Below are positions 6,306 through 61,704 of a stretch of DNA of 64,000 nt, one piece after another. The notes under the pieces were generated by a model. The model did not search any database. It had not been told where the DNA came from and saw nothing but the letters and a program-made list of their open reading frames with translations. Made by a program: the position numbers and the translations under genes. The stretch lies in IMG/VR virus record IMGVR_UViG_3300026484_000007, positions 208,603 to 272,602 of that record; one strand, written 5' to 3'. How positions within the stretch are numbered: the stretch's first letter is position 1; each line of letters starts with the position of its first letter.

Positions 6306-6491
6306 ATGTTACTTAAAGAATGTAATGGTTGCAAATATCTAGCTCGATTGATCGGTATAGGTCAAGGAGTTAGATGTACAAATCCAGAAAATCAAATAAC
6401 TGGAATGGATGGATCAAAAGCGATAGTTATATCTCAGATAGAGAATTGTAATTATTATAAGCAACATAAAAAAGATAAGAAAGAATCTTAA
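6306..6491 (+). CDS. small Cys4 (zinc-binding-like) protein
   Basis: AAAGGA RBS before the ATG at 6306; CNGC...C...C pattern. The track's start at 6180 overlaps nrdB and is unlikely. Confidence 0.6.
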   Translation: MLLKECNGCKYLARLIGIGQGVRCTNPENQITGMDGSKAIVISQIENCNYYKQHKKDKKES

Positions 6492-6512
6492 AAGGATCTT
6501 AAAAAGATCCAA

Positions 6513-6540
6513 TTGAAATATTTTTTTTGAAATTTAAGAT
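6513..6540 (+). promoter_or_regulatory. sigma70-like promoter for the large ncRNA
   Basis: TTGAAA-N16-TAAGAT ending about 9 nt before the first strand of the closing helix. Confidence 0.45.
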
Positions 6541-6672
6541 TTTCTTTAACTTTCTTTATCAGGCGATAAAAATCGAATAATCCCGCCTGACTGGAGCGAA
6601 ATACCAGTCACAAAATTATTTTACATGGGTTAAAATAAGGAGATCGCACTGAAGATGCGCTTTTATAATTAC

Positions 6673-6744
6673 ACCAAAAACGAAGGTTCGATTCCTTCCT
6701 TTCCCAACATAATAGGGAAAGTAGCCAAGAGGTAAGGCATTGGT
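6673..6744 (+). tRNA. circularly permuted tRNA-like domain (3' half precedes 5' half, no closed anticodon loop)
   Basis: ACCAA-aaac-GAAGG-TTCGATT-CCTTC-CTTTCCC-A, 8-nt linker, then GGGAAAG-TA-GCC-AAGAGGTAA-GGC-A-TTGGT. All four stems pair perfectly. Confidence 0.8.
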
Positions 6745-6775
6745 TCCAAAATATAAATATATAACAATCGAACGA

Positions 6776-6859
6776 AAAGTTCAAAGTAAAAAATTTAAAA
6801 TTTAATGCTTAAATACTAACTACTAAAAATTAACCTTCAAAATTTAAAATAAAAAGCTT
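6776..6859 (+). repeat. 12 consecutive degenerate 7-nt units, each starting AA
   Basis: aaagttc aaagtaa aaaattt aaaattt aatgctt aaatact aactact aaaaatt aaccttc aaaattt aaaataa aaagctt. Confidence 0.7.
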
Positions 6860-6938
6860 TTTAAAATCTTGGAGGAAGTTTTAAGTGGCGAGGATTAGCC
6901 CGATTTTTGATCCAAGCTGCTTGATAGAGAAAGACTTC

Positions 6939-6976
6939 AAAACCCTCGCATAGTGCGAGGGTTTTTTTGTCGTTAG
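6939..6976 (+). terminator. intrinsic terminator with GTCGTTAG tail
   Basis: AAAACCCTCGCA-TAG-TGCGAGGGTTTTTTT. Confidence 0.9.
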
Positions 6977-7015
6977 AAAAAATTAGATAAAATTAGAAAA
7001 ATAAAAAAATTTTGT

Positions 7016-7110
7016 AAATAAAATCTATGGGGAGCAATGCTCCCCATAGGGGGACTTTGTCCCCCTTGGAGGAGTGGAGACTTTTCGTCTCCACTCCTCT
7101 CTTTCTGCTA
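7016..7110 (-). ncRNA. GC-rich triple-hairpin cassette 1 (putative small RNA; strand uncertain)
   Basis: Hairpins CTATGGGGAGC/GCTCCCCATAG, GGGGGAC/GTCCCCC and GAGGAGTGGAGAC/GTCTCCACTCCTC. Leftward promoter-like motif at 7116-7145. On the - strand the last hairpin is followed by ATTTTATTT. Confidence 0.5.
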
Positions 7111-7115
7111 TTTAT

Positions 7116-7145
7116 ATATCAATTAAAACTAAAGCAGTTCTAAAA
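7116..7145 (-). promoter_or_regulatory. bipartite motif TTTTAGAACT-N14-(A/T)GATAT (putative phage promoter)
   Basis: Same motif and spacing at 7334-7363, 7966-7995 and 8695-8724, the last directly upstream of the only - strand gene. Confidence 0.55.
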
Positions 7146-7166
7146 AATCTCCGTAAATAAAATTAC

Positions 7167-7328
7167 AAATAAAATCTATGGGGAGCATTGCTCCCCATAG
7201 GGGGACTTTGTCCCCCACTCACTGGGGTGGTTGCCCACATTGGCAACGGGAGCAATCCCGCTCATTTGAGCGGGGCCCGACCACCCCGGAGGACTCACCT
7301 CCTTTCTTGGAGTCCTCCTTTTTTGCTA
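7167..7328 (-). ncRNA. GC-rich multi-hairpin cassette 2 with SD/anti-SD loop (putative small RNA; strand uncertain)
   Basis: Shares the two terminal hairpins with cassettes 1 and 3. Extra multibranch domain at 7224-7287. Hairpin 7288-7318 has loop ACCTCCTTTCTTG. Confidence 0.55.
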
Positions 7329-7333
7329 ATTAA

Positions 7334-7363
7334 ATATCTGATAAAACTAAAGCAGTTCTAAAA
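7334..7363 (-). promoter_or_regulatory. TTTTAGAACT-N14-AGATAT motif
   Basis: Copy of the bipartite motif, followed on the - strand by TAGCAAAA. Confidence 0.55.
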
Positions 7364-7442
7364 AATCTTTATAAATAAATTTAAAAAATCTTTTCTAAAA
7401 CAATATATAAATTATCAATTAAAATATATAAGGAGATTAATT

Positions 7443-7727
7443 ATGGCAACTGCTTTTCATAAAGATTACAATGCAGAATACGTAATCGGTGATGACGTTG
7501 TAAATTCTGAAGAAGTAAAAAATACTCAGCCAACTGTATTATCTAAAATTATAGATGGAAAACCAGCTGATGTTAATACCGAAACTAAAGATATGCTAAC
7601 CGAAGAAACTGTATGGTTTAGAAATGACAGAATCAGACAAACTCTTCAAGATCAATACACTGAAGTTTCTAGACAAACTTTTGAAATTGATCAATTTGAA
7701 ACTACTGATTTACCAGGAAATCCATAA
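7443..7727 (+). CDS. hypothetical protein
   Basis: 94 aa, AAGGAG RBS. Confidence 0.75.
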   Translation: MATAFHKDYNAEYVIGDDVVNSEEVKNTQPTVLSKIIDGKPADVNTETKDMLTEETVWFRNDRIRQTLQDQYTEVSRQTFEIDQFETTDLPGNP

Positions 7728-7778
7728 GCAAATATTGCGATGCATGGCGCTAATGGATAACTCGTATATATATCTCAT

Positions 7779-7826
7779 AAAACTCCGGAGTTCTAAAATA
7801 GAGCTCTGGAGTTTTTTTGTCGTTAG
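7779..7826 (+). terminator. intrinsic terminator with GTCGTTAG tail
   Basis: AAAACTCCGGAGTTCT...AGAGCTCTGGAGTTTTTTT. Confidence 0.7.
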
Positions 7827-7865
7827 AAAAAATTAGAAAAAATTAGAAAAAATAAAAAAATTTGC

Positions 7866-7960
7866 AAATAAAATCTATGGGGAGCAATGCTCCCCATAGG
7901 GGGACTTTGTCCCCCTTGGAGGAGTGGGGAATTTTCATCTCCACTCCTCTCTTTCTGCTA
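7866..7960 (-). ncRNA. GC-rich triple-hairpin cassette 3 (near copy of cassette 1)
   Basis: Part of a ~185-bp direct repeat (6961-7145 vs 7811-7995). Confidence 0.5.
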
Positions 7961-7965
7961 TTTAT

Positions 7966-7995
7966 ATATCTAATAAAACTAAAGTAGTTCTAAAA
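7966..7995 (-). promoter_or_regulatory. TTTTAGAACT-N14-AGATAT motif
   Basis: Copy of the bipartite motif. Confidence 0.55.
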
Positions 7996-8042
7996 ATAAT
8001 TAAAAATTAATGCGAAAAAAAGAGACAGAAGCGTCAGTAGGC

Positions 8043-8663
8043 TTAAGCCTCCGATTGATGCTTTTTAAGCAATTTATCGAAGGCTTTCAGATACCTACTA
8101 ATCTTGACAATATACACAATTGTCGCCCCTGAAATTATCCCGAATAGGAGTATAACTCCATTGTCGGGCAACTTCAGGTATGAATAGCCCATTAATAATA
8201 GGGCCACAACCAATTGCACTCTCGAGCGCGCTTTATTCACGTCACTCGAAAACGTCTCCGCCTCTTCTGAATTCAGCAAGACGTTCGTCAAAACTGAATT
8301 CATGTTCGCCTGAACGGCGAACAACAATACATACAGCGGAAAGATCAATACGACGATCTTTGCCGCTAATACTCTATCTATCTCCGGATGGAGATAGAAT
8401 AGGTACACTAGAATGCAGAAATACGCTACATCTAGTGTGCTTAATAACACGAAGCTCGCAAAGTAGCTAATTTTGTGTGTTAGCCACTTATTGAACTCCA
8501 TCATTGTAGCGCTCATTAGACTAATGAACGCGATAAACCCAACCGAGAACTCACCATAAAGGTGAGACTCAAATGGTTGAATTATTTGGAAAGCTAAGCT
8601 TCCCAGAATAACTATCTTTATTCTTAATGTTAAGAATAAAGACTTCAATACTTCCATCTTCAT
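8043..8663 (-). CDS. polytopic membrane protein (about 5-6 TM)
   Basis: AAGGAG RBS on the - strand, several hydrophobic helices, visibly more GC-rich than neighbours. Confidence 0.75.
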   Translation of the reverse strand: MKMEVLKSLFLTLRIKIVILGSLAFQIIQPFESHLYGEFSVGFIAFISLMSATMMEFNKWLTHKISYFASFVLLSTLDVAYFCILVYLFYLHPEIDRVLAAKIVVLIFPLYVLLFAVQANMNSVLTNVLLNSEEAETFSSDVNKARSRVQLVVALLLMGYSYLKLPDNGVILLFGIISGATIVYIVKISRYLKAFDKLLKKHQSEA

Positions 8664-8694
8664 CTTTTCTCCTTTGATTTTTTTGCTATTTTAG

Positions 8695-8724
8695 ATATCT
8701 CATAAGCCTTTACCAGTTCTAAAA
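8695..8724 (-). promoter_or_regulatory. TTTTAGAACT-N14-AGATAT motif upstream of the - strand gene
   Basis: - strand reads TTTTAGAACT ggtaaaggcttatg AGATAT ctaaaaTAGCAAAAAAATCAAAGGAG...ATG. Confidence 0.6.
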
Positions 8725-8824
8725 AAAACTTCGATTTTCTTAACAAAGATTTTCTTAACAAACGAAGAAAATTCATAAGAATAAAATACAAATAAATACA
8801 AAAATATTTAATTAAGGAGTATTA

Positions 8825-10273
8825 ATGGGTTTTGATTTACTCGATATAAATAAATTTATTAAAGAAAAGGATGCTAAAGAAGTAACATCCGAAAAAACAT
8901 TTTTATTTACAAAAGGCGATTTTATTCCAGATCCAAATGGTTTATATAGTCCACAGATCTTCGAAGGAACTGGTATTAAAGGACAACGGGATAAATACGG
9001 ATACATATCTTTAAAAAATACAATTATGCATCCATTAATTTATAAGAATCTAAAAAAGATTGCTACAATTTTTTATTATGTAGCAACTTCTGAAAAACAC
9101 GTTGAAATTATTGATGGTGAACTTATAGAAACACCACCAGAAAACGGTGGTAAAACTGGATTAGACTTTCTAATAAATAATTGGAAAAAAATTAATTTAG
9201 ATAAATACAAGAAAGAAACGAATGAATTCTTTATTGAGTTTCTAAAGAAAGTTCAAGAAAAATTAATTTTTATTAATAAACTTCCAGTTATTCCAGTACT
9301 TTATCGACCTTATACTTTTGAACACGGACGAGTAATTGAAGATGAAATTACTGAAAAGTATAAAAAAATTTTATTAGAATACAAAAAAACTATGGGAGGT
9401 CTTTCCGGTCAGCCTTTGAATTCGTTGAATTCTAAAAATTTAACTGCGTCTGAAGATGCAGTTAGTTTAACTGGAAGAAGATCTACTATATCTAACATTG
9501 ATAACCCATTAGGTATTTCTGATGATAATGGATTAGAATTATTAAATTCATTTATTCAGAATAATGTAAATTCTTCAGAAAAAGTTCAAAAATACGTTCA
9601 GGATCTATATGATTATTTTATTTCTAAATTAGAGAAAAAAGAAGGTTTCTTTAGAAGTAATTTAGTAGGTAAAAGATTAGATAATGTATCAAGATTAGTT
9701 GCTAATGCTCGTCCAGATATACCAGTAGATTGCGTAGGTATTCCTTGGCATGTATTAATTAATATTTTTGATTATTACGTATTAGCTGAGTTAGAGCATA
9801 ATAAAGATGTCGCTGAAAAACTTGGTCTTGCTGACATTAGTACAGTAGACTTTGGAAAACACATCTATTATATCTATAAAAACTGTGATATTTATTGCAA
9901 GTCGTTTCCTGAAAGACAACAGATATGGATAGAATTACTTACAGAAATCTTTGATAAACATGATTATCTTAGAGTAGTATTTAAACGGGATCCAGGTTGG
10001 TCAGCGAATTCATTCTGGTCAGTAAAACCATTAATCTTAAAAGGATGTTCGTATTACATTGTTGTAAATTCATTTTATTACAAACCACTTGGTGGAGATA
10101 GTTTTAATACTAATATTCTAATTAAAGAATCTACTCAAAAATCTATTACTAAAGATTTAATTTTATCAAAGGATCCAAAAAAGATCCAAAAAAGATATAC
10201 GTTAGAATTTCCAGTAGCTAATGAAGCAAAAACATTAAAAAATTATTACGAAAAAAATAAAAAGGAGAAATAA
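8825..10273 (+). CDS. DNA-directed RNA polymerase beta' subunit, N-terminal fragment
   Basis: GLYSPQIF, YGYISL, LPVIPVLYRP, KKEGFFRSNLVGKRLD, VVFKRDP. Ends at PLGGD (NADFDGD position) followed by an unrelated 57-aa tail. Confidence 0.88.
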   Translation: MGFDLLDINKFIKEKDAKEVTSEKTFLFTKGDFIPDPNGLYSPQIFEGTGIKGQRDKYGYISLKNTIMHPLIYKNLKKIATIFYYVATSEKHVEIIDGELIETPPENGGKTGLDFLINNWKKINLDKYKKETNEFFIEFLKKVQEKLIFINKLPVIPVLYRPYTFEHGRVIEDEITEKYKKILLEYKKTMGGLSGQPLNSLNSKNLTASEDAVSLTGRRSTISNIDNPLGISDDNGLELLNSFIQNNVNSSEKVQKYVQDLYDYFISKLEKKEGFFRSNLVGKRLDNVSRLVANARPDIPVDCVGIPWHVLINIFDYYVLAELEHNKDVAEKLGLADISTVDFGKHIYYIYKNCDIYCKSFPERQQIWIELLTEIFDKHDYLRVVFKRDPGWSANSFWSVKPLILKGCSYYIVVNSFYYKPLGGDSFNTNILIKESTQKSITKDLILSKDPKKIQKRYTLEFPVANEAKTLKNYYEKNKKEK

Positions 10274-13176: not shown

Positions 13177-13317
13177 GAAAACTCGTGATCTTAAAACGTT
13201 GAGCTTCATTAGATATCTAAAGATATATACGAGTTCTAAAATTTATAAAACCGTTTTAGAACTCGTATATATCCTTAGCATCGAAAAAAGATGCTACTTG
13301 AAAAATCAAAGTTTTTC
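13177..13317. repeat. ~140-bp dispersed palindromic element, copy A
   Basis: GAAAACTCGTGATC..AAAACGTTG..GATATATACGAGTTCTAAAA..TTTTAGAACTCGTATATATC..GATGCTAC..AGTTTTTC. Confidence 0.85.
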
Positions 13318-13372
13318 TTTTTCATTTTTTAAAAAATTGAATTTTTTAAACGAAGCCAAAAAAGGATTTTTT

Positions 13373-17549: not shown

Positions 17550-17680
17550 GAAAACTTGAGTTTCCAGAACGTTGAGCTTCTATAGATATCTAAAGATATA
17601 TAGCAGTTCTAAAAATTTTAGAACTGCTTTTATATCGCTTGTATCTAAAAAAGATGCTACGTGGAAAATCAAAGTTTTTC
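17550..17680. repeat. ~140-bp dispersed palindromic element, copy B
   Basis: Same core, GCAGTTCTAAAA/TTTTAGAACTGC. Confidence 0.85.
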
Positions 17681-17741
17681 AAGTTTTAAATTTAAAAAAA
17701 TACAAAGAAAGAAAAAGAAAGAAAATTAAAAGGATAGTTAA

Positions 17742-26667: not shown

Positions 26668-26715
26668 TGGAGTTGTGATCTTTTTTAGATCGCTCTCCAG
26701 TTTTTTTGTCGTTAG
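26668..26715 (+). terminator. terminator on a GATC palindrome, with GTCGTTAG tail
   Basis: TGGAG..GATCTTTTTTAGATC..CTCCA then T7. Confidence 0.65.
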
Positions 26716-26750
26716 AAAAAATTCTGAAAAAATTCTGAAAAAAATTATAA

Positions 26751-26890
26751 AAAACTTGAGATTCGCGGACGTTGCGCTTCTGTAGATATCTAAAGATATA
26801 TAGCAGTTCTAAAATTATCAGAGTGGTTTTAGAACTCGTATATATCTTTGTGTATCCAAAATAGATGCTACATAGAAAATCAAGTTTTTC
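26751..26890. repeat. ~140-bp dispersed palindromic element, copy C
   Basis: Same core. Confidence 0.85.
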
Positions 26891-27033
26891 AATGTTTTCT
26901 TTTGATTGATTTTGATTAAGATTAATTTTAATTTTAATTTTAATTTTAATTAAATTTTATTTATAGCCAAAATCGATCTAACGAAGATAAAAATCTTTAA
27001 TTTAAAAATAATATTATATACTAAGGAGAAATA

Positions 27034-27894: not shown

Positions 27895-29682
27895 ATGAAA
27901 AACGAGAAAAAAGAAATGAATTTTAAACCAAAAAAATTTAGAGAAATCGAAGAAAGTTTTTTAAAAAATCTTGGATTATATGGTGGATTGGGAGCAGCAG
28001 GAGCTGCTGCTGCAATCTATGGAAACGATCATTGGGATCCGAATGCGACTCATACTGAAGTTGTTGAAAAAGTAAAACATGGAGTAGGCGCGACTGGGGA
28101 TAAAGCTGCATGGGACGCGCATGTAAAAAAGGAAAATGAATTTATAAATAATGAAACAGCTTCCGATTTTAATAAATTAATGAAGGGTAATTTTAGTAAT
28201 TCTAAGAACGATTACCAGGAATACCTAAAACAAACAGAGACTATCGATGATTTTAGAAAACTGACACCAGAACAGCAAAAACATTATATTCTTAGCTTAG
28301 CGGGATATGATTTCGATCATCCTGAAGCTTCTAAAAATACTTTAGCATTAAAGTTTGCTCAAGATTTTTATGCTCAAGAATTAGCTAAACAGTATCCTGA
28401 GGCTAAAAACCCTGAAATTTTTCAAACTATGGCTAAGAATTTCTTTGATAATAATAATACTAATGATACTTGGATGTTTAATAAAGATAATAAATTCGTT
28501 CAAGCTCAAGCAGGAGCTGAAAATTCATTCAACGATGCTTTAAAATTAAACAGTCCTAAAATTGATTTTAAAAATGATTGGACTACTTTTACTCAAAATA
28601 AAAATCAAGATTATATGAACATGGGAAGAATTTTATCAACAGTTGATGGAAATGGTAATGATAATGGCAACAATTTAGTAAATTTTGGAGATTTTATTAA
28701 AAAAGATGGAACGTTTGATTTCAATAAAGCTTCGCAATTTTATAATGGAGATGTTAATAAAGTTAAAGAATTATATAAAACATTTATCGATGCCGCTGAT
28801 ACTGACGCAGGCGATACGTTTTCAGGAGACAATATTAAAAATAAAAATCCTTACCCAAATCCGAATGGATTTTTTGATCATATTTCAAATTATTTTTCAA
28901 AAGGTAATATGCCTTTTAATAAAATTAATTCCATTGATGATTTAAAAGCTTGGAATGAAAAACTTTTAGAGACACAACCAAATGCTGCAAAAATATCAAA
29001 TTATGATGCTGTTTATAGTGGATTTTTTAATCCTGATACTATGCATCCAGCTGGAACATTAAACAGTTCTCAAGGGACTGATCTTGATTCTAATTTAGAT
29101 TTTTCAAAATTAACTTTAAAAAGCGATACTACGACACCGTCACCTGTAAAAACAGATTTTGATCAATTCAATAAAAAATATGAATCCTATAAACCATACG
29201 GAGACCAGGCAAATATTTTTATAAAAAACTGGAGTAATTCTACTGTCTTTGATGGACAAGGTAATGTAAAAGATACAGATTCTGTAGTTAATCCAAATGA
29301 AAAGTGGAGAGAATTTGATTATGATAAAAATGGTAAGATAGATGAAAAAGATTTTGAAGCTTTTAAAAAGTCGGACGAATATCATAAAAAATTAGAAGAA
29401 TACAGAAACAAACATCATTCTGAATACGAAAAAAAATTTTTAGAAAATTATAAAGGCAAAATTCCCGAAAAATATAATCCGGGGCATGATGAAATAATCA
29501 AAGAAAAGAAAGAAGTAAAAGGTATTACTACTAAACCGATGGCTGGTCTTGTAGGAGCTGGAGCTGGACTTGCTGCAGCAGGTATAAGTTCTGCAATCGC
29601 TAACGCAGCAAAAAAACCTAATCATTCGCAGTTCCCAGCTCATCCAACGTATTCGCCGTATCCAGCATATCCTCATAGATAA
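27895..29682 (+). CDS. large glycine-zipper protein with EF-hand-like loop
   Basis: IEES, GGLGAAGAAA, DYDKNGKIDEKD, GLVGAGAGLAAAG. Confidence 0.6.
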   Translation: MKNEKKEMNFKPKKFREIEESFLKNLGLYGGLGAAGAAAAIYGNDHWDPNATHTEVVEKVKHGVGATGDKAAWDAHVKKENEFINNETASDFNKLMKGNFSNSKNDYQEYLKQTETIDDFRKLTPEQQKHYILSLAGYDFDHPEASKNTLALKFAQDFYAQELAKQYPEAKNPEIFQTMAKNFFDNNNTNDTWMFNKDNKFVQAQAGAENSFNDALKLNSPKIDFKNDWTTFTQNKNQDYMNMGRILSTVDGNGNDNGNNLVNFGDFIKKDGTFDFNKASQFYNGDVNKVKELYKTFIDAADTDAGDTFSGDNIKNKNPYPNPNGFFDHISNYFSKGNMPFNKINSIDDLKAWNEKLLETQPNAAKISNYDAVYSGFFNPDTMHPAGTLNSSQGTDLDSNLDFSKLTLKSDTTTPSPVKTDFDQFNKKYESYKPYGDQANIFIKNWSNSTVFDGQGNVKDTDSVVNPNEKWREFDYDKNGKIDEKDFEAFKKSDEYHKKLEEYRNKHHSEYEKKFLENYKGKIPEKYNPGHDEIIKEKKEVKGITTKPMAGLVGAGAGLAAAGISSAIANAAKKPNHSQFPAHPTYSPYPAYPHR

Positions 29683-30243: not shown

Positions 30244-30571
30244 TATTCTTGTTGGTGATATTGATACGACAATGATCAACGGAATTCCAAATGAATTAAT
30301 TTTTAAAAATATATTAAATAATAATATTCAATTTTTTCAAGAAAACGAATTGAAAGCGTTAGATACTTTTAAGATCGATGAATCTTATAAATACCGTCCA
30401 GATAAAGTAGCTTTCGAATACTACGGAGAAGACGGCTATTATCCTCTCGTGCTTTACGCAAATAATATTGGATCAATTTTACAATTTAATCCAGAGATTA
30501 TTGGAGATGAGATAAAATTATTAAAACCAGAATATGCATTAAAATTAATAATTGATTATAGGCATAAATAA
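30236..30571 (+). CDS. baseplate wedge protein, T4 gp53/LysM-like
   Basis: YRPDKVAFEYYGEDGYYPLVLYANNI. Confidence 0.7.
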   Translation: MASILVGDIDTTMINGIPNELIFKNILNNNIQFFQENELKALDTFKIDESYKYRPDKVAFEYYGEDGYYPLVLYANNIGSILQFNPEIIGDEIKLLKPEYALKLIIDYRHK

Positions 30572-30660
30572 TATAATAAATAATATAATAAATAATATAA
30601 TAAATAATATAATAAATAATATAATAAATAATATAATAAATAATATAATAAATAATATAA
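30565..30660. repeat. tandem repeat (TAAATAATATAA)x8
   Basis: Direct reading. Confidence 0.95.
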
Positions 30661-30743
30661 TACATATATGCGAACAGACGCAGTCAATTAACTGACCTTA
30701 CTGACCTTACTGACTACGTCAAAACGATTAAAAGGAGATTTAA

Positions 30744-41494: not shown

Positions 41495-41625
41495 GAAAAC
41501 TCGTGATCCTAAAACGTTAAGCAACGATAGATATCTAAAGATATATAGCAGTTCTAAAATTTTTAGAACTGCTTTTATATCGCTTGTATCTAAAAAAGAT
41601 GCTACGTGGAAAATCAAAGTTTTTC
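41495..41625. repeat. ~140-bp dispersed palindromic element, copy D
   Basis: Same core. Confidence 0.85.
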
Positions 41626-41650
41626 AATATAATTTTAAATAATTTTTATT

Positions 41651-41791
41651 GAAAACTCGTGATCTTAAAACGTTGAGCAACGATAGATATCTAAAGATAT
41701 ATACGAGTTCTAAAACCACTTTAGAAATTTTAGAACTGCTTTTATATCGCTTGTATCTAAAATAGATGCTACTTTAAAAAACAAGTTTTTC
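41651..41791. repeat. ~140-bp dispersed palindromic element, copy E (tandem with D)
   Basis: Same core. Confidence 0.85.
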
Positions 41792-41892
41792 AAAAGTTTT
41801 TTTTGCCCTCTTAATTATTTTTAATTAAAAAATACAAAGAAAAAATTAAACGAAGTTTTAAACGAAGTTAAAGAAGATAAAAAGGAGATAAA

Positions 41893-43599
41893 ATGTCAAA
41901 ATTCGAAAACTTTTTTGGAGCGCTTCCTATTTTAAAACATATGAAATCTGAAGATTTTAAAGCTTTAAAATTACTAACAGAAAATGAAAAATATTCAGAA
42001 GATCTTCAAAAACTTGAAAATATTAATTCTAAATTAATCAATATTATCAATAACCCTTATTTAAAATATCCTAATTATTTAAAAGAACAAGATGAATCTT
42101 TTATAGATACATTTTATAATAATAAAGAAGGTAAAGAAAAATTAAAAAAAACATTAAGTGATAGATATCGATCTTCAATAGATACATTAGAAGAATATTC
42201 TAAAAATTTAGATAAAATAGATTATACTTTTGAAATTCTTTTTGAAGCTCAAGAAGAAGTAAATTCCGAAAGCCAATCAGATCCTTCTCAATCTCAAAAT
42301 GGCGAAAATAGAAAATTATCTGACGAACAGATTCAGCAGATAGCTCAAGGTATCCAAGATGGATCAATATCCGAAGAAGAGATTCAATCTGCGATACAGC
42401 AAGGTCAAATTGGAGAAGGAGATGTTGAATTAATTCAACAAGCGATGGGTCAGCAATCTGAAGAATCTGCTCAACAAAAAGAGGAAATTTCTAAACAACA
42501 AGTTGATCAAATTACTGATTCTTTTATTCGATTAAATTTATTTGATAAAATTAATGATCTTGAAGAAAAATTTGAAAGTTTTATCAATACTTCAAATGAT
42601 GCTGAAATGGTCGAAAAAATTAAACAATTAAAAAATTATTTAGATATAATTCTTTCTTTAGTGTATAATATGGATGTAAATTTGCTTTACCAATTATACG
42701 CTACTATCGAATTAAAAGCAATTACATTATTTAAAGAAAAAATGGGAATAAAAACTATAGATGATGATGACGAATACTTAATTAATCTTCAACGTCAAGC
42801 ATATGCTCAAGAATTAAAAAGTAAATTTCCAAAAGAAATTCTTATGGAAAAATTAGCTTCTGGCGAATTAGAAGGTACTACGATTCTTGAAGATTTAGTA
42901 AAATATCAAATATATTCAGAAGAAGAAATTCAACAGATGATGCAAGAGGCACAGCAGCAACAGGAACAACAACAGGCGCAAGAACAAGGGCAACCAGAAC
43001 AAGGATCCCCAGCAGATCAACAACCTGGAACACCTGATCCAGCAGCAGCTCAAGCGCAACCTCAGCCAGATCAACCTGCTCAGCAAGCTAATCCTCAACA
43101 AGTTGATCCAGCGCAAGCGGGACAAGCTCAAGCTCAACCTCAACCAACACAAGGATCTCCAGCAGATCAACAAGCTCAAGCGGGACAAGCTCAAGCACAA
43201 CCTCAAAATAATCAAGAACAATTAGCTCAGCAGATGATGCAATCTGCTGAAGAATTAAAACAAGCTGCTCAAGTAATGTTAAATAATTCAGAACAAGATG
43301 AAATTACGCAAATCGCTAACGCAATCGTATCTGGGCAAATGTCAGCTGATGAATTAATTCAACAATTTATGAATAATCAGATTTCGAAAGAAGATTTTAA
43401 AAAGATTATTTCAAAAATCGATGAAATTAAAAAAGCTGGTGGAGAAGGATCTTCTGGAGATCAAGCTCAAAGCCAAGCTCAAAGTCAAGGCGAACAGCAA
43501 ATTACAGATGATGAATCTAAAGATTTAAAAGCAAAAGAATCGAAAGAACCTAAAAAGAAAAAGAATGTTGACGTTAGTAGCGACGCAGTTGATGTATAA
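41893..43599 (+). CDS. Gln-rich acidic protein, possible scaffold/head protein
   Basis: 568 aa downstream of portal; QAGQAQAQPQ repeats; LxE motifs. Confidence 0.5.
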   Translation: MSKFENFFGALPILKHMKSEDFKALKLLTENEKYSEDLQKLENINSKLINIINNPYLKYPNYLKEQDESFIDTFYNNKEGKEKLKKTLSDRYRSSIDTLEEYSKNLDKIDYTFEILFEAQEEVNSESQSDPSQSQNGENRKLSDEQIQQIAQGIQDGSISEEEIQSAIQQGQIGEGDVELIQQAMGQQSEESAQQKEEISKQQVDQITDSFIRLNLFDKINDLEEKFESFINTSNDAEMVEKIKQLKNYLDIILSLVYNMDVNLLYQLYATIELKAITLFKEKMGIKTIDDDDEYLINLQRQAYAQELKSKFPKEILMEKLASGELEGTTILEDLVKYQIYSEEEIQQMMQEAQQQQEQQQAQEQGQPEQGSPADQQPGTPDPAAAQAQPQPDQPAQQANPQQVDPAQAGQAQAQPQPTQGSPADQQAQAGQAQAQPQNNQEQLAQQMMQSAEELKQAAQVMLNNSEQDEITQIANAIVSGQMSADELIQQFMNNQISKEDFKKIISKIDEIKKAGGEGSSGDQAQSQAQSQGEQQITDDESKDLKAKESKEPKKKKNVDVSSDAVDV

Positions 43600-43600
43600 G

Positions 43601-43670
43601 AATTATTAAAAATCATTAAGAATTATTAAGAATTATTAAGAATTATTAAAAATTATTAAGAATTATTAAA
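43601..43670. repeat. tandem repeat (AATTATTAAR)x7
   Basis: Direct reading. Confidence 0.9.
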
Positions 43671-43708
43671 AATATATAGAATTATAAAAAATTATAAAAA
43701 GGATTACG

Positions 43709-46621: not shown

Positions 46622-46737
46622 TCTTTTTTAGATCACTTCTACGGGAGTGATCTTTTTTAGATCACTTTCAAAATTGAATTAAAAATAATTAAAAATAATT
46701 AAAAATAATTAAAAATAAAAAACTTAAAGGATTCAAA

Positions 46738-49307: not shown

Positions 49308-49345
49308 AAAAGTGATCTTTTTAAGATCACTTTTTTTGTCGTTAG
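49308..49345 (+). terminator. terminator on a GATC palindrome, with GTCGTTAG tail
   Basis: AAAAGTGATCTTTTTAAGATCACTTTTTTT. Confidence 0.7.
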
Positions 49346-49377
49346 AAAAAATCCATAGAAAAGATTATAAAAATTAA

Positions 49378-49515
49378 GAAAAAACAGCGATCCTAAAACG
49401 TTGCGCTTCTATGGATACACAAAGATATATACGAGTTCTAAAGTTTTATAGTTTTAGAACTCGTATATATCCTTAGTATCGAAAAAAGATGCTACTTAGA
49501 AAATCAAAATTTTTC
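49378..49515. repeat. ~140-bp dispersed palindromic element, copy F
   Basis: Same core. Confidence 0.85.
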
Positions 49516-49546
49516 AAGAAAAAAATAAAAAAATAAAGGAAAATAA

Positions 49547-55191: not shown

Positions 55192-55945
55192 ATTAAATTT
55201 TTTCAATGGTAATCTTTTTTACGCATTTGAATATTTTGAATATCTACGAAAAAATAATTGGAAATTAATAATAGATTTAAATGGATCTTTAAAAGATCCA
55301 TTTAAACTTCCAATAAATAAAAAAATTTTATTTGAAGCGTTTCGAGAAAAATACAGTAAAAAATATCATAATTTATTTACTGAAATTATTTTCTTGAAAC
55401 CTTCAACTTTTTTTGTCGCCGATAAAATCCTTGTATTAGATCAAACCAGCATAAAATATTTAAATAAAACATTCGTGTCTAAAAAGATTATTTATAATTA
55501 TGGAGACGATGAGCGATCTTTAAAAGATCCTTTGAATAATAAAAATAATAAAAATAATAAAAATATTATTACGATAGGAGATAAAGATATCGGTTGTAAA
55601 ATTCAATATCATTATCCATTAAAATTAAATTTTAAAATCTTAAAACGTTTAAATTATAAAAGGATCCAAAAAAGATCCTTTTTGGAAAATAAAACAAAAA
55701 ACATCTATGAAAGAAAAAGAAATGTTAAAGATTTTCATTATACTTTCGATACTTTAATTTATAAAAAAGAAAATTTCTGGGAAAGAGCAAATCGATTAAT
55801 TCCAGAATGTAAATTTTATAATAAAGAAATAATATTTGAAAATAAAGATAAAAGAATTGATAGCGCAAATCTTCGCTATCAATCGTCGTGGAAAGATTAT
55901 AGTTTATATCATAGTGATTTTAAAGATTTCGTGGAAAATCTTTGA
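55160..55945 (+). CDS. glycosyltransferase-like (GT-B?) protein, paralog of 59644-60579
   Basis: GNLFYAFEY, AFREKY and RLIPECKFYNKEI shared with the paralog. Confidence 0.4.
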   Translation: MKKYQKVIFYKLNFFNGNLFYAFEYFEYLRKNNWKLIIDLNGSLKDPFKLPINKKILFEAFREKYSKKYHNLFTEIIFLKPSTFFVADKILVLDQTSIKYLNKTFVSKKIIYNYGDDERSLKDPLNNKNNKNNKNIITIGDKDIGCKIQYHYPLKLNFKILKRLNYKRIQKRSFLENKTKNIYERKRNVKDFHYTFDTLIYKKENFWERANRLIPECKFYNKEIIFENKDKRIDSANLRYQSSWKDYSLYHSDFKDFVENL

Positions 55946-56075
55946 TTTTTAAAGTAGCATCTATTTTCGATACAAGCGATATAAAAGCAGTTCTAAAAAA
56001 TTTAGAACTGCTTTAGAACTCGTATATATCTTTGGGTATCTAATGAAGCGCAACGTTTTAGGATCACGAGTTTTC
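55934..56075. repeat. ~140-bp dispersed palindromic element, copy G (inverted)
   Basis: Reverse complement reads GAAAACTCGTGATCCTAAAACGTTGCGCTTC...GATGCTAC. Confidence 0.85.
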
Positions 56076-56134
56076 AAAGGAAAAAATGAAAGTATAAATA
56101 AATTTATAAATAAATCAAAGTCAAGGAATTATTT

Positions 56135-60617: not shown

Positions 60618-61622
60618 ATGGATAAAATTTTAACTTTAGAAAATATTAAAGCATTAGAAATCGGTTTAAATAATACATGCAATCTTGCTTGCCCAATGTG
60701 CACGAGACAAGAATTGAAATCAAAAGTAAAAAATTTATTAAATAACTGTGAACTCAATTTAGATATTCTGAAAAAAAGGATAAATGAATTAAATATTGAA
60801 AGAATAGAGATCGTTGGTTCAATAGGAGAACCATTATTTTATTCTTCTATTTTTAATTTAATTGAATTTTTAAATGAAAAGAATATAAGAATAATTATTA
60901 GTACTAATGGTTCTATTAAAAATTTTAATTTTGAAAAGCTTGGAAGATTATTAAAAGAAAATGATATAATTAGATTTCCTATGGATGGAACTTTTGAAAC
61001 TCATTCAATTTATAGAAAAAATAGTGACTTAAACTTAGTATTAAATAATATAAAAAAATTAAAAAAAGAAACTAAAGCTACAATAATTCTTCAAACTATT
61101 ATATTTAAATATAATGAAAATCAATTAGATGAAATTTTTAAAATATTTAAAGAATCAGAAGCTGATTTATTTGAACTTACTCATACAGGGTATTCCGAAT
61201 ATTTAGATGATCAAGTTAGACCAGTTGATGAATTATTAAAATTATATAAAAAAAACGATAAGATCGCCAATGAGAAAAAAAATATTATAAACTGCGAAGC
61301 GATAAAAGATAAAAAAATTTATCTTAATTGTTTTGGATATTTTTTACCATGCGAAAATCTTGATGAATATGTATTTTTGCATAAAGATGATATTCATTCT
61401 TGCTCGGAAGCTAATCTTAATAAATTATTTTATCAAAATAATATGCAAGAAATAATTAAAGAAATTAATTCTATAATAAAAAATAAACAGAATTTCGTAG
61501 AATGCCATCAATCTTGCGGATTATTTAATAATATAATTAGAAAAAAATTTGATGTTTTCCAATTTACAAAAAACGGTGAAAAATATAAATTAAAAAAATA
61601 TAGATTATTATATAATGATTAA
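60618..61622 (+). CDS. radical SAM protein (twitch/SPASM-like tail)
   Basis: CNLACPMC, GSIGEP, STNG, MDG, PC..C...C. Confidence 0.9.
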   Translation: MDKILTLENIKALEIGLNNTCNLACPMCTRQELKSKVKNLLNNCELNLDILKKRINELNIERIEIVGSIGEPLFYSSIFNLIEFLNEKNIRIIISTNGSIKNFNFEKLGRLLKENDIIRFPMDGTFETHSIYRKNSDLNLVLNNIKKLKKETKATIILQTIIFKYNENQLDEIFKIFKESEADLFELTHTGYSEYLDDQVRPVDELLKLYKKNDKIANEKKNIINCEAIKDKKIYLNCFGYFLPCENLDEYVFLHKDDIHSCSEANLNKLFYQNNMQEIIKEINSIIKNKQNFVECHQSCGLFNNIIRKKFDVFQFTKNGEKYKLKKYRLLYND

Positions 61623-61690
61623 TAAATAATTATAAATAATTATAAATAATTATAAATAATTATAAATAATTATAAATAATTATAAATAAT
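61621..61690. repeat. tandem repeat (TATAAATAAT)x7
   Basis: Direct reading. Confidence 0.95.
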
Positions 61691-61704
61691 TAATGGGAGA
61701 TATT

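What the first reader, a model, noticed from the sequence alone, without database searches (positions are those of the whole stretch)
7288..7318. Hairpin loop presenting a 13-nt match to the 16S rRNA 3' end
Seen: stem GGAGGACTC/GAGTCCTCC with loop ACCTCCTTTCTTG; 7295-7307 reads TCACCTCCTTTCT. Known: many bacterial 16S rRNAs end GAUCACCUCCUUUCU. On the - strand, the orientation implied by the promoter motif, the RNA displays AGAAAGGAGGUGA, a maximal Shine-Dalgarno with no start codon at normal spacing. Inference: a 30S-subunit trap or decoy if - strand, or an anti-SD mimic that masks strong host RBSs if + strand. Either would be an RNA-based translation takeover device.
Basis: partly seen in the sequence, partly recalled or inferred. 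Interest (0 to 1): 0.85.

Follow-up and report, generated by a model that had tools for sequence, protein, structure and literature searches.

The report
Orphan ribosome-binding loop in phage RNA
A hairpin in a giant phage of deep-sea Campylobacterales shows in its loop a perfect 13-base ribosome-binding sequence with no gene behind it. It is one variant copy of a three-times-repeated small non-coding RNA cassette that a CRISPR array of a type III-linked repeat family in the same sample has spacers against. It more likely anchors a ribosome on its own RNA than hijacks translation.

Summary
A 9-bp stem with a 13-nt loop lies at 7288-7318, and 7295-7307 matches the 16S rRNA 3' tail exactly. No shuffle gave a match. 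The longest other SD-type match in the 64 kb is 8 nt.

The hairpin is not a stand-alone device. It is the variant third stem-loop of copy B of a cassette present three times (A about 7016-7146, B 7167-7365, C 7866-7996). The window is part of a 272-kb, 27% GC jumbo phage with its own split RNA polymerase. Copies A and C lack this loop.

Three lines point to minus-strand transcription:
- A promoter-like motif shared with minus-strand protein genes here and in relatives.
- A U-run after hairpin 1 on the minus strand.
- Two exact spacers in a CRISPR array from the same metagenome. Its repeat family sits next to type III cas genes in vent Campylobacterales, and its spacers show strong strand bias.

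On the minus strand the loop exposes a maximal Shine-Dalgarno sequence with no usable start codon. My best reading is a cis-acting ribosome anchor of the STAB-SD type on a phage small RNA. A duplication by-product is nearly as likely. A translation-takeover role is not supported: the phage's own genes use the same SD, and only one of three copies carries the loop.

The parts
7288..7318 (-). The hairpin of the finding. It is the third stem-loop (hp3) of cassette copy B, with a 9-bp stem and a 13-nt loop. On the minus strand it is the first hairpin after the leader.
   Evidence: Sequence; folds; coordinates.
7295..7307 (-). 13-nt orphan Shine-Dalgarno AGAAAGGAGGUGA on the minus strand (equal to the 16S-tail sequence on the plus strand). 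Its first 9 nt are unpaired with probability >= 0.89.
   Evidence: Duplex with the 16S tail is -21.4 kcal/mol, against -7.7 to -12.2 for real RBSs.
7314..7321 (-). First SD-like element (AAAGGAGG). It partly lies in the 5' arm and sits where real minus-strand genes have their RBS.
7319..7365 (-). Promoter-like module plus A-rich leader of copy B: TTTAGAACTG, 14-15 nt, GATAT.., ..TAGCA, A-run. The plus-strand T6 'terminator tail' is part of this leader.
   Evidence: Homologous to L055 330-416.
7224..7287 (-). 64-nt Y-shaped (three-way junction) GC-rich insert found only in copy B.
7176..7216 (-). Hairpins hp1 (7176-7200) and hp2 (7200-7216) of copy B. Positions 7176-7213 are the exact protospacer of CRISPR spacer 13.
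7167..7175 (-). AUUUUAUUU run after hp1 on the minus strand, a terminator-like end of the copy B unit.
7016..7146 (-). Cassette copy A: promoter-like module 7100-7146, hp3 7068-7099, hp2 7049-7065, hp1 7025-7049, U-run 7016-7024. Positions 7073-7110 are the exact protospacer of CRISPR spacer 17.
7866..7996 (-). Cassette copy C, 94% identical to A. It lies just downstream of the only minus-strand protein gene. Spacer 13 matches 37/38 and spacer 17 matches 35/38.
7443..7727 (+). Conserved 94-aa ORF between copies B and C. It is context and not part of the RNA element.
   Evidence: 55% identical to the L055 ORF, E = 3e-36. No Pfam or PHROG family.
8043..8725 (-). The only minus-strand protein gene (206 aa, membrane-like, 40% GC), with the same promoter-like motif (about 8685-8725) upstream. 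It serves as the reference for the motif's orientation.

Best explanation
The hairpin is the 5'-proximal stem-loop of a roughly 160-nt minus-strand small non-coding RNA. This RNA is copy B of a three-copy cassette in a jumbo phage that infects hydrothermal-vent Campylobacterales.

Each cassette has the same layout on the minus strand:
- a phage promoter-like motif;
- an A/G-rich leader that keeps the RBS-like element of the promoter-RBS module;
- three GC-rich hairpins in place of an ORF;
- a U-run.

In copy B the leader and SD element appear to have been locally duplicated. One SD is now locked in the stem. A second SD, perfectly complementary to the 16S 3' tail over 12-13 nt, is displayed in the loop.

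Proposed mechanism (inferred, not shown): a 30S subunit or ribosome docks on this orphan SD and stays there because there is no start codon. This shields the 5' region of the RNA from 5'-to-3' decay by RNase J. The effect would be in cis, like the STAB-SD or polypurine 5' stabilisers of Bacillus mRNAs. It would not be a global trap for ribosomes. What the small RNA itself does is unknown.

Shown here: the anatomy, the repeat family, the accessibility of the loop, the pairing strength, the motif homology and the CRISPR spacer matches. Inferred: the transcription strand, the 5' end, 30S binding and stabilisation.
For: Repeat family and origin of the loop:
- Three copies share hp1, hp2 and the base of hp3. 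Copy B's loop aligns to the 3' arm of copies A and C plus an 8-nt insertion that resembles the tail.

Minus-strand unit:
- The motif TTTAGAACT(G), 14-15 nt, GATAT.., ..TAGCA, A-run, RBS, ATG precedes minus-strand protein genes in the window (ATG 8663), in L006 (5858), in L009 (14080) and in L055 (csx3-like).
- The three cassettes align to this motif on the minus strand, with their SD-like element at the RBS position.
- Window 7354-7450 is homologous to L055 330-416. There the leftward motif drives a real minus-strand gene at the place copy B occupies.
- hp1 is followed by AUUUUAUUU on the minus strand in all three copies.

CRISPR evidence:
- Contig L021 from the same metagenome is a 20-spacer CRISPR array. 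Spacer 13 equals 7176-7213 and spacer 17 equals 7073-7110, both 38/38, and both crRNAs have plus-strand sense.
- In Campylobacterales MAGs the repeat family lies downstream of, and co-directional with, cas6-cas10-RAMP-cas2-cas1, or next to an RT-Cas1 fusion.
- Its spacers are strongly pyrimidine-rich in crRNA sense: 16/18 in L021 (p = 0.0013) and 145/178 across the family (p = 6e-18). This is the bias expected when protective type III spacers are selected to pair with transcripts (PMC7515739).
- By that rule the cassette target is minus-strand RNA.

Orphan SD:
- 13 nt against a maximum of 8 nt elsewhere in the window.
- Duplex of -21.4 kcal/mol against -7.7 to -12.2 for real RBSs, and the loop is >= 0.89 unpaired.

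Precedent:
- A strong SD without an initiation codon stabilises Bacillus RNAs (PMC3997798 section 16; hbs, PMC5737220).
- Helicobacter lacks RNase E and uses an RNase J degradosome (PMC3592473).
- The C. jejuni 16S tail is GAUCACCUCCUUUC.
Against: - There are no transcript data. The strand, the 5' end and expression all rest on motif alignment and on two CRISPR spacers.
- The hairpins are palindromic. Spacer 13 nt 1-25 are also perfectly complementary to plus-strand RNA of copies A and C, which weakens the strand inference.
- The array in L021 has no cas genes on its 1.7-kb contig. Its type is inferred from relatives whose repeats are 30-31/35 identical.
- Copies A and C bury their SD-like element in a 13-14-bp stem and have no exposed SD. 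An exposed SD is therefore not needed by the cassette family.
- A 5' hairpin alone could protect the RNA.
- STAB-SD elements are documented in Firmicutes and not in Campylobacterota.
- The promoter-like motif also occurs in palindromic pairs in other intergenic regions. It could be an operator or an AT-rich terminator arm rather than a promoter.
Confidence: 0.38

Rival explanations
1. Evolutionary by-product. The cassette is a repeated promoter-plus-stem-loop module or small structured RNA. Copy B's odd loop is just the scar of a local duplication of its RBS-like leader (AAAAAAGGAGGAC / AAGAAAGGAGGTG), with no selected interaction with the ribosome.
For: - Only one of three copies has the loop, while A and C conserve the hairpin base and a short apical loop.
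- The two SD-like strings in copy B are near-repeats of each other, and the first sits at the RBS position of the parent module.
- Two of the 13 matching bases (GA) are fixed by stem pairing.
- No homologous cassette was found in any other contig, so there is no conservation evidence.
Against: - The match exceeds the usual 8-nt RBS core by 5 bases and is the longest in 128 kb of sequence counting both strands.
- None of 100 shuffles contained it. A composition-based estimate of mine, not a tool result, gives about 1e-3 per window.
- It is held single-stranded in a loop.
Confidence: 0.3
2. Plus-strand reading. The hairpin plus T6 is an intrinsic (possibly bidirectional) transcription terminator or insulator between plus-strand operons, and the 16S-like loop is incidental.
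For: - There is a GC-rich 9-bp stem followed directly by TTTTTT on the strand that carries nearly all genes.
- The nested GGAGG-ACTCA-CCTCC + TTTCTT is called terminator-like, and hp3 of copies A and C is called terminator-like too.
- The scan finds 14 terminator-like sites in the region against 2.2 expected.
Against: - A 13-nt loop is outside the 3-8 nt used for terminators.
- A strong conventional terminator already ends the upstream operon at 6939-6965, and no plus-strand gene ends at the cassette.
- The T-run aligns with the A-run leader of minus-strand genes.
- The phage's usual terminators carry a different, conserved tail, TTTTTTTGTCGTTAG.
- The CRISPR spacer orientation points to the other strand.
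Confidence: 0.15
3. The small RNA acts in trans as a 30S decoy or sponge that sequesters ribosomal subunits or otherwise reprogrammes translation during infection.
For: - The SD is exposed, maximal and start-less, with -21.4 kcal/mol pairing to the 16S tail.
- Minus-strand transcription is favoured.
- Two of 20 spacers in one array hit this small cassette and none hit the other 63 kb. This would fit a very abundant RNA if spacers are taken from RNA by an RT-Cas1, which is present in a related MAG.
Against: - Phage genes use the same SD, so a trap would not discriminate between host and phage.
- Titrating thousands of 30S subunits needs extreme copy numbers.
- Only one binding site exists in one of three copies.
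- I know of no precedent.
Confidence: 0.08
4. A plus-strand small RNA uses the C/U-rich loop as a 16S-tail mimic to pair with and mask strong SD sequences, as C/U-rich-loop sRNAs do at G-rich ribosome-binding sites.
For: - The loop is >= 0.78 unpaired on the plus strand over CCUCCUUUCU.
- CJnc190 in C. jejuni, and RepG in H. pylori as cited in that paper, use C/U-rich loops to pair with G-rich target sequences. For CJnc190 the target is a G-rich RBS (PMC8687705).
- A T6 terminator follows the hairpin.
Against: - No promoter-like motif faces this way upstream of hp1.
- The spacer orientation and the leader homology favour the minus strand.
- There is no specificity, because the loop complements the generic SD shared by phage genes.
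- There is no Rfam similarity to any known sRNA.
Confidence: 0.05

Closest known systems
STAB-SD / polypurine 5' mRNA stabilisers of Bacillus (cryIIIA leader, hbs; the polypurine stabiliser of Hue et al. 1995 is listed as reference 179 in PMC3997798)
   Same: An SD-like sequence with extended complementarity to the 16S 3' end lies near the 5' end of an RNA, without a functional start codon. A bound ribosome or 30S blocks 5'-to-3' decay (PMC3997798 section 16; PMC5737220). Campylobacterota, like Bacillus, rely on RNase J (PMC3592473).
   Different: Here the SD is displayed in a hairpin loop of a putative non-coding RNA rather than in an mRNA leader. It is longer, 13 nt; the cryIIIA element is about 9 nt by my recollection, which I did not check here. 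It sits in a phage of Campylobacterales, and no stability effect has been measured.
PeSL (promoter-early stem-loop) mobile regulatory cassettes of T4-type phages
   Same: Short repeated promoter-plus-stem-loop modules cluster in a variable region and flank small genes of unknown function (PMC2839356, PMC4122927). Here three copies flank a 94-aa ORF and a 206-aa ORF that both lack a known family (the 94-aa ORF has a homolog in relative L055), at a locus that differs between related phages.
   Different: The promoter motif is not sigma-70-like. Each unit has three or four GC-rich hairpins (z about -9) and looks like a discrete RNA. The cassette is oriented against the flanking genes. Recombination or mini-circles were not examined.
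C/U-rich-loop small RNAs of Campylobacterota (CJnc190, RepG)
   Same: If the plus strand is read, a C/U-rich hairpin loop next to a U-tract could pair with G-rich ribosome-binding sites (PMC8687705).
   Different: There is no sequence or Rfam similarity. The orientation evidence favours the other strand. The loop complements the generic SD rather than a specific target.
Rho-independent terminators
   Same: A GC-rich stem is followed by a run of six U on the plus strand.
   Different: The 13-nt loop is atypically large. The U-run is better explained as the complement of an A-rich leader.

Membership tests
STAB-SD-type 5' stabiliser | SD-like sequence with strong complementarity to the 16S rRNA 3' end | tested here: met
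   13/13 to UCACCUCCUUUCU, with a -21.4 kcal/mol duplex. The C. jejuni tail is GAUCACCUCCUUUC.
STAB-SD-type 5' stabiliser | No initiation codon at functional spacing | tested here: met
   One GTG overlaps the SD. The next GTG is 12-13 nt downstream inside the closing stem of the Y insert. Minus-strand ORFs of copies A/C and B read the shared hairpins in different frames.
STAB-SD-type 5' stabiliser | Located near the 5' end of the transcript | tested here: inconclusive
   By alignment with minus-strand gene leaders the 5' end would lie about 20-30 nt upstream. No transcription start site data exist.
STAB-SD-type 5' stabiliser | Host decays RNA 5'-to-3' (RNase J), and the element lengthens RNA half-life | not testable with these tools
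   An RNase J-based degradosome is known in Helicobacter (PMC3592473). The actual host and the effect on half-life are untested.
Intrinsic (Rho-independent) terminator, plus strand | GC-rich stem immediately followed by a U-run | tested here: met
   9-bp stem followed by TTTTTT.
Intrinsic (Rho-independent) terminator, plus strand | Short loop (about 3-8 nt) and position at the end of a transcription unit on that strand | tested here: not met
   The loop is 13 nt. Only the weak 5-bp inner hairpin passes the scan. The upstream operon already ends at the 6939-6965 terminator, and no plus-strand ORF ends here.
C/U-rich-loop sRNAs (CJnc190 / RepG type) | Independent transcript on the strand that shows the C/U-rich loop | tested here: inconclusive
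   No promoter-like motif faces rightward upstream of hp1. The motif and the spacers favour the opposite strand.
C/U-rich-loop sRNAs (CJnc190 / RepG type) | Homology to a described family | tested here: not met
   No Rfam hit at gathering score. Only chance-level hits appear at E <= 5.
PeSL-like regulatory cassette | Repeated promoter-plus-stem-loop unit flanking small genes of unknown function in a variable region | tested here: met
   Three copies within 1 kb flank a 94-aa ORF and a 206-aa ORF without a known family. The locus content differs in relatives.
PeSL-like regulatory cassette | Sigma-70-type early promoter; recombination between copies | tested here: not met
   The motif is not sigma-70-like in spacing. 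Recombination is not testable here.
Target of type III CRISPR immunity | Exact protospacers, no shared PAM, crRNA complementary to a transcript | tested here: inconclusive
   There are two 38/38 protospacers. Their flanks differ (AAT vs AGG on the 5' side, CCC vs TTT on the 3' side). The type is inferred from related arrays. The transcript was not observed.

The most novel reading that the evidence does not exclude
A jumbo phage makes an abundant small RNA whose hairpin loop is a perfect 12-13-nt partner of the 16S rRNA tail. The RNA would dock on free 30S subunits and act on the ribosome pool itself, either by sequestration or by marking or re-routing ribosomes during infection. The RNA would be abundant enough to be the only part of the window the array has spacers against (all 20 spacers were tested on the 64-kb window; four of the other 18 were tested on the whole contig).
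Probability: 0.1. Interest if true: 0.85.

Novelty: new variant of a known kind. Interest (0 to 1): 0.5.

Why it matters
If the orphan SD binds 30S subunits, this would extend the ribosome-as-RNA-protector principle (STAB-SD). That principle would then reach beyond Firmicute mRNA leaders to a phage non-coding RNA in Campylobacterota. It would also give a compact natural module, a 13-nt SD in a loop, for RNA stabilisation.

The cassette matters independently of the loop. It is a family of highly structured putative phage RNAs without relatives in Rfam or in the collections searched. It occupies a locus where a related phage carries a Csx3-like gene. It is also the only part of the 64-kb window matched by spacers of a co-occurring array from a type III-linked repeat family. 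Together these make it a concrete entry point to the RNA-level conflict between jumbo phages and type III CRISPR systems at hydrothermal vents.

If the loop is only a duplication scar, the finding is ordinary. The lesson is then that GGAGG/CCUCC-based stems next to U or A runs readily imitate the 16S tail.

Tried and rejected
- Rfam search at gathering score over the whole window, and at E <= 5 over 6400-8100. There were no meaningful hits for the cassette.
- ARAGORN tRNA and tmRNA search: none found.
- blastn of 6500-8900 against 50,697 phage records: no match.
- Search for the cassette elsewhere. The hp1+hp2 pattern in IMG/VR matched only the source contig, at 3 sites. The species-representative genomes gave none.
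- The hp1 pattern in metagenomes gave the source contig, the CRISPR array, and 16 unrelated contigs. Those 16 carry an isolated GGGGAGCAnTGCTCCCC hairpin after genes, with no hp2 or hp3.
- Relatives found through the RNA polymerase beta' N-terminal piece (25-62% identity; L003-L009, L055) have no GC-rich hairpin cluster. Loop conservation in orthologues therefore could not be tested.
- Coding readings were rejected. Plus- and minus-strand mini-ORFs across the cassette lack a properly spaced RBS or start. They read the shared hairpins in different frames in A/C and in B, run past the U-run, and have no Pfam hit.
- Four other spacers (6, 9, 14, 18) were scanned in IMG/VR to get protospacers with known gene orientation. 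None matched.
- No spacer from the related MAG arrays matches the window.
- No 16S gene end is present in any fetched locus, so the true host tail could not be read. A published C. jejuni tail was used instead.
- A sigma-70-like 11/12 site at 7576->7548 on the minus strand was considered as the driver. It was set aside because such sites are at chance frequency here, 22 found against 23.6 expected.

Full report
**1. What is there**

Window 7288-7318 is a perfect 9-bp stem (GGAGGACTC / GAGTCCTCC) closing a 13-nt loop, and 7295-7307 reads TCACCTCCTTTCT. The hairpin is the minimum-energy structure on both strands. This holds in a 47-nt context (-16.2 kcal/mol) and inside the whole 161-nt element.

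The exact 13-mer occurs once, and none of 100 dinucleotide-preserving shuffles contained it. Read in SD sense, it is the longest match to the complement of the 16S tail on either strand of the 64 kb. The next best matches are 8 nt: two on the plus strand (one is a real RBS at 29682) and one at 7321->7314 in the leader of the same hairpin.

**2. Genomic setting**

The window is part of IMGVR_UViG_3300026484_000007, also known as Ga0256837_1000001, a 272,602-bp contig.
- It is about 27% GC.
- Nearly every ORF of 100 aa or more is on the plus strand.
- It encodes ribonucleotide reductase and split beta/beta' RNA polymerase subunits. It is therefore a jumbo phage with its own multisubunit polymerase.
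- Its genes carry canonical SD sites. An AAGGAG-type site gives a 16S duplex of -6 kcal/mol or better for 81% of 58 ORFs.
- No INPHARED phage is similar at the DNA level.
- The closest relatives, found through the beta' N-terminal piece, are 52-62% identical metagenomic contigs.

**3. The hairpin is one module of a repeated cassette**

Positions 6961-8019 hold three copies of a modular element. Each copy has these parts:
- hp1, a stem of GGGGAGC with a 3-nt loop, extended to 10-11 bp by its CTAT/ATAG flanks.
- hp2 (GGGGGAC-TTT-GTCCCCC).
- hp3.
- A conserved 47-nt AT-rich module.

The units fold far better than shuffles. The z-score is about -9 for A and C and -7 for B. They are the only GC-rich non-coding stretches in the window or in any relative fetched.

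In copies A and C, hp3 is a 13-14-bp stem on the same GGAGGA.../...TCCTC base with a short loop. Copy B carries the hairpin of the finding instead, plus a 64-nt Y-shaped insert (7224-7287). In the alignment, B's loop corresponds to part of the A/C 3' arm plus an 8-nt insertion, TTTCTTGG, that resembles the tail. Read on the minus strand, B has two near-identical SD strings in tandem: AAAAAAGGAGGAC and AAGAAAGGAGGTG. The 16S-like loop is therefore copy-specific and looks like a local duplication. The paralogues keep the stem base but not the loop.

**4. Which strand is read?**

The flanking genes suggest the plus strand, and the hairpin is followed by T6. Three lines of evidence point the other way.

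(a) Promoter-like motif.
- The motif is TTTAGAACT(G), 14-15 nt, GATAT.., ..TAGCA, an A-rich leader, RBS, ATG.
- It precedes the only minus-strand protein gene of the window (ATG 8663). It also precedes minus-strand genes in relatives L006 (5858), L009 (14080) and L055.
- The AT-rich module of all three cassettes aligns to it on the minus strand.
- In that alignment the cassettes' SD-like element sits where the genes have their RBS, and B's A6 run (the plus-strand 'terminator tail') sits where the genes have their A-run.

(b) Synteny.
- The 94-aa ORF downstream of copy B has a 55% identical homologue in L055 (E = 3e-36).
- Window 7354-7450 is homologous to L055 330-416.
- At the place of copy B, L055 has the leftward motif driving a real minus-strand gene.

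(c) Minus-strand end. hp1 is followed by AUUUUAUUU on the minus strand in all three copies.

One caveat applies. Elsewhere in the genome the motif occurs in palindromic pairs, so it might be an operator or a terminator arm rather than a promoter.

**5. CRISPR evidence**

A metagenome scan for hp1 returned a 1,698-bp contig from the same sample, Ga0256837_1026025 (L021). It is a CRISPR array of 20 repeats plus a degenerate terminal one.

Its orientation is set by three features: the ATTGAAAC 3' end of the repeat, an AT-rich 177-nt leader, and the degenerate distal repeat.

In that orientation:
- Spacer 13 equals window 7176-7213 (copy B hp1+hp2, 38/38; copies A and C 37/38).
- Spacer 17 equals 7073-7110 (copy A hp3 plus tail, 38/38; copy C 35/38).
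- No other spacer matches the 64 kb.
- Four other spacers tested against IMG/VR match nothing, including the rest of this contig.

The three cassettes span roughly 335 nt (summed). Two hits both falling in that span of a 64-kb window is unlikely under uniform sampling; my estimate is about 3e-5.

The 3' half of the repeat occurs in arrays of several hydrothermal-vent Campylobacterales MAGs.
- In JALVTE010000076 the array lies downstream of, and on the same strand as, cas6-cas10-RAMPs-cas2-cas1-cas2.
- In JALULO010000264 an RT-Cas1 fusion, a SAVED protein and a WYL protein lie nearby.

This is a type III, RNA-targeting context, and it makes Campylobacterales the likely host.

Spacers of this family are strongly pyrimidine-rich in crRNA sense: 16/18 in L021 and 145/178 family-wide, p = 6e-18. 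The phage coding strand is purine-rich. This is the bias expected when protective type III spacers are selected to pair with transcripts (PMC7515739). The two cassette crRNAs have plus-strand sense, so their full-length targets are minus-strand RNAs.

Caveats:
- The hairpins are palindromes. The first 25 nt of spacer 13 also pair perfectly with plus-strand RNA of copies A and C.
- L021 itself carries no cas gene.

The two protospacers abut the predicted 5' end (..UAGCAG) and the base of the last hairpin before the U-run. Acquisition from the ends of a discrete RNA would produce this pattern, but that is speculation.

I put minus-strand transcription at about 0.65.

**6. What the loop would do**

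On the minus strand the RNA starts with an A/G-rich leader. In copy B one SD (AAAGGAGG) is locked in the stem. The loop shows AGAAAGGAGGUGA, and the first nine bases are unpaired with probability 0.89 or higher.

Its duplex with the 16S tail is -21.4 kcal/mol, against -7.7 to -12.2 for the phage's real RBSs. The mature tail measured in C. jejuni is GAUCACCUCCUUUC (PMC6288834).

No start codon is usable. The mini-ORFs across the cassette are in different frames in A/C and in B and run past the U-run.

The closest documented mechanism is the orphan-SD 5' stabiliser. In Bacillus, a strong SD even without an initiation codon stabilises RNA by occluding the 5' region from RNase J1 (PMC3997798 section 16; PMC5737220). 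Helicobacter, a member of the host phylum, lacks RNase E and uses an RNase J degradosome (PMC3592473).

I therefore favour a cis-acting ribosome anchor, with confidence 0.38. A neutral duplication scar is nearly as likely (0.30), because copies A and C do without an exposed SD.

**7.

A global 30S trap or an anti-SD mask is not supported.
- The phage's own genes need the same SD.
- There is one site in one of three copies.
- Titrating ribosomes would need extreme abundance.
- The plus-strand mimic lacks a rightward promoter-like motif, and its T-run is explained otherwise.

I keep these readings at 0.08 and 0.05. The plain plus-strand terminator reading is at 0.15. It fails on loop size and on position, because a conventional terminator with the phage's usual TTTTTTTGTCGTTAG tail already closes the upstream operon at 6939-6965.

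**8. Comparison with known systems and novelty**

The element works most like a STAB-SD element. Its genomic behaviour resembles the PeSL promoter/stem-loop cassettes of T4-type phages (PMC2839356). It belongs to no described RNA family.

It is best classed as a new variant of a known kind. The cassette family itself is new, and its targeting by a type III-linked array is the most interesting part.

Interest is 0.5. The sequence facts are striking and testable, but the function is unproven and an ordinary explanation remains likely.

Noticed in passing
window 6660-6752 (+): A circularly permuted tRNA-like gene. The 3' half (anticodon-stem strand, T-arm GAAGG-TTCGATT-CCTTC, acceptor strand CTTTCCC, A) lies 8 nt upstream of the 5' half (GGGAAAG, D-arm, TTGGT, TCCAAAA). 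The acceptor pairing is 7/7. ARAGORN finds nothing in the natural order but calls a tRNA when the halves are re-joined in silico: Leu-CAA or Trp-CCA, depending on the junction. Rfam gives a local sub-threshold hit to the junction of permuted tmRNAs, E = 2.9e-5. The 3:70 pair is G-C and not G-U, so it is not a canonical tmRNA. A decayed tandem tRNA pair is not excluded.
   Followed up: partly
L021 (Ga0256837_1026025, whole 1,698-bp contig): A CRISPR array from the same metagenome as the phage, with 20 spacers of 33-44 nt. The repeat ends in ATTGAAAC and belongs to a family found in vent Campylobacterales MAGs next to type III cas genes and, in one MAG, an RT-Cas1 fusion. This links the phage to a Campylobacterales host.
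   Followed up: yes
L055:1-410 (closest relative, ENA FORT17-1 scaffold_13210): At the position syntenic to cassette B, the related phage carries a minus-strand Csx3-like ORF (PF09620, E = 9.5e-8; only the N-terminal half of the profile matches). It is followed by two 37-nt direct repeats starting at 8 and 86, at the contig end. This may be a phage-borne mini CRISPR array or an anti-type-III module.
   Followed up: partly
L005:9400-9940: In another relative, the space upstream of the RNA polymerase beta' gene holds about 6.5 tandem copies of an 82-bp AT-rich unit with a small palindrome (AGAGCTTTTTTAGATAGCTCT...). The locus upstream of this gene seems to collect repeats in the whole clade.
   Followed up: no
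window 13178-13328, 17551-17691, 26751-26902, 41496-41803, 49380-49526, 55935-56080: Genome-wide intergenic modules built on an 18-bp inverted repeat (TATATAGCAGTTCTAAAA / TTTTAGAACTGCTTTTATA), each arm followed by a GATATCT/GTATCTAAAA box. They may be divergent promoters, operators or AT-rich bidirectional terminators. At 55997/56001 the two flavours are inverted relative to the other six.
   Followed up: partly
window 6961-6985, 7811-7835, 26698-26725, 49328-49355: Terminator hairpins are followed by a conserved tail, TTTTTTTGTCGTTAGAAAAAAT, and phased A-tracts. This is a fixed 'end of operon' module.
   Followed up: no
window 8043-8663 (-): The only minus-strand protein gene: 206 aa, membrane-like, 40% GC in a 27% GC genome, with no Pfam or PHROG family. 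It may have been acquired horizontally together with the cassettes.
   Followed up: partly
window 7576->7548 (-): A near-consensus sigma-70-like site (TTAACA, 17 nt, TATAAT; 11 of 12) inside the 94-aa ORF and pointing at cassette B. Such sites are at chance frequency in this AT-rich DNA.
   Followed up: no
window 30545-30681, 43597-43687, 46667-46721, 61608-61692: AT-rich tandem repeats with 12-nt and 10-nt periods in intergenic spacers.
   Followed up: no
window 7224-7287: A 64-nt GC-rich three-way-junction insert unique to cassette copy B, with an 8-bp closing stem and two hairpins. There is no Rfam match and no other copy in the collections searched.
   Followed up: partly
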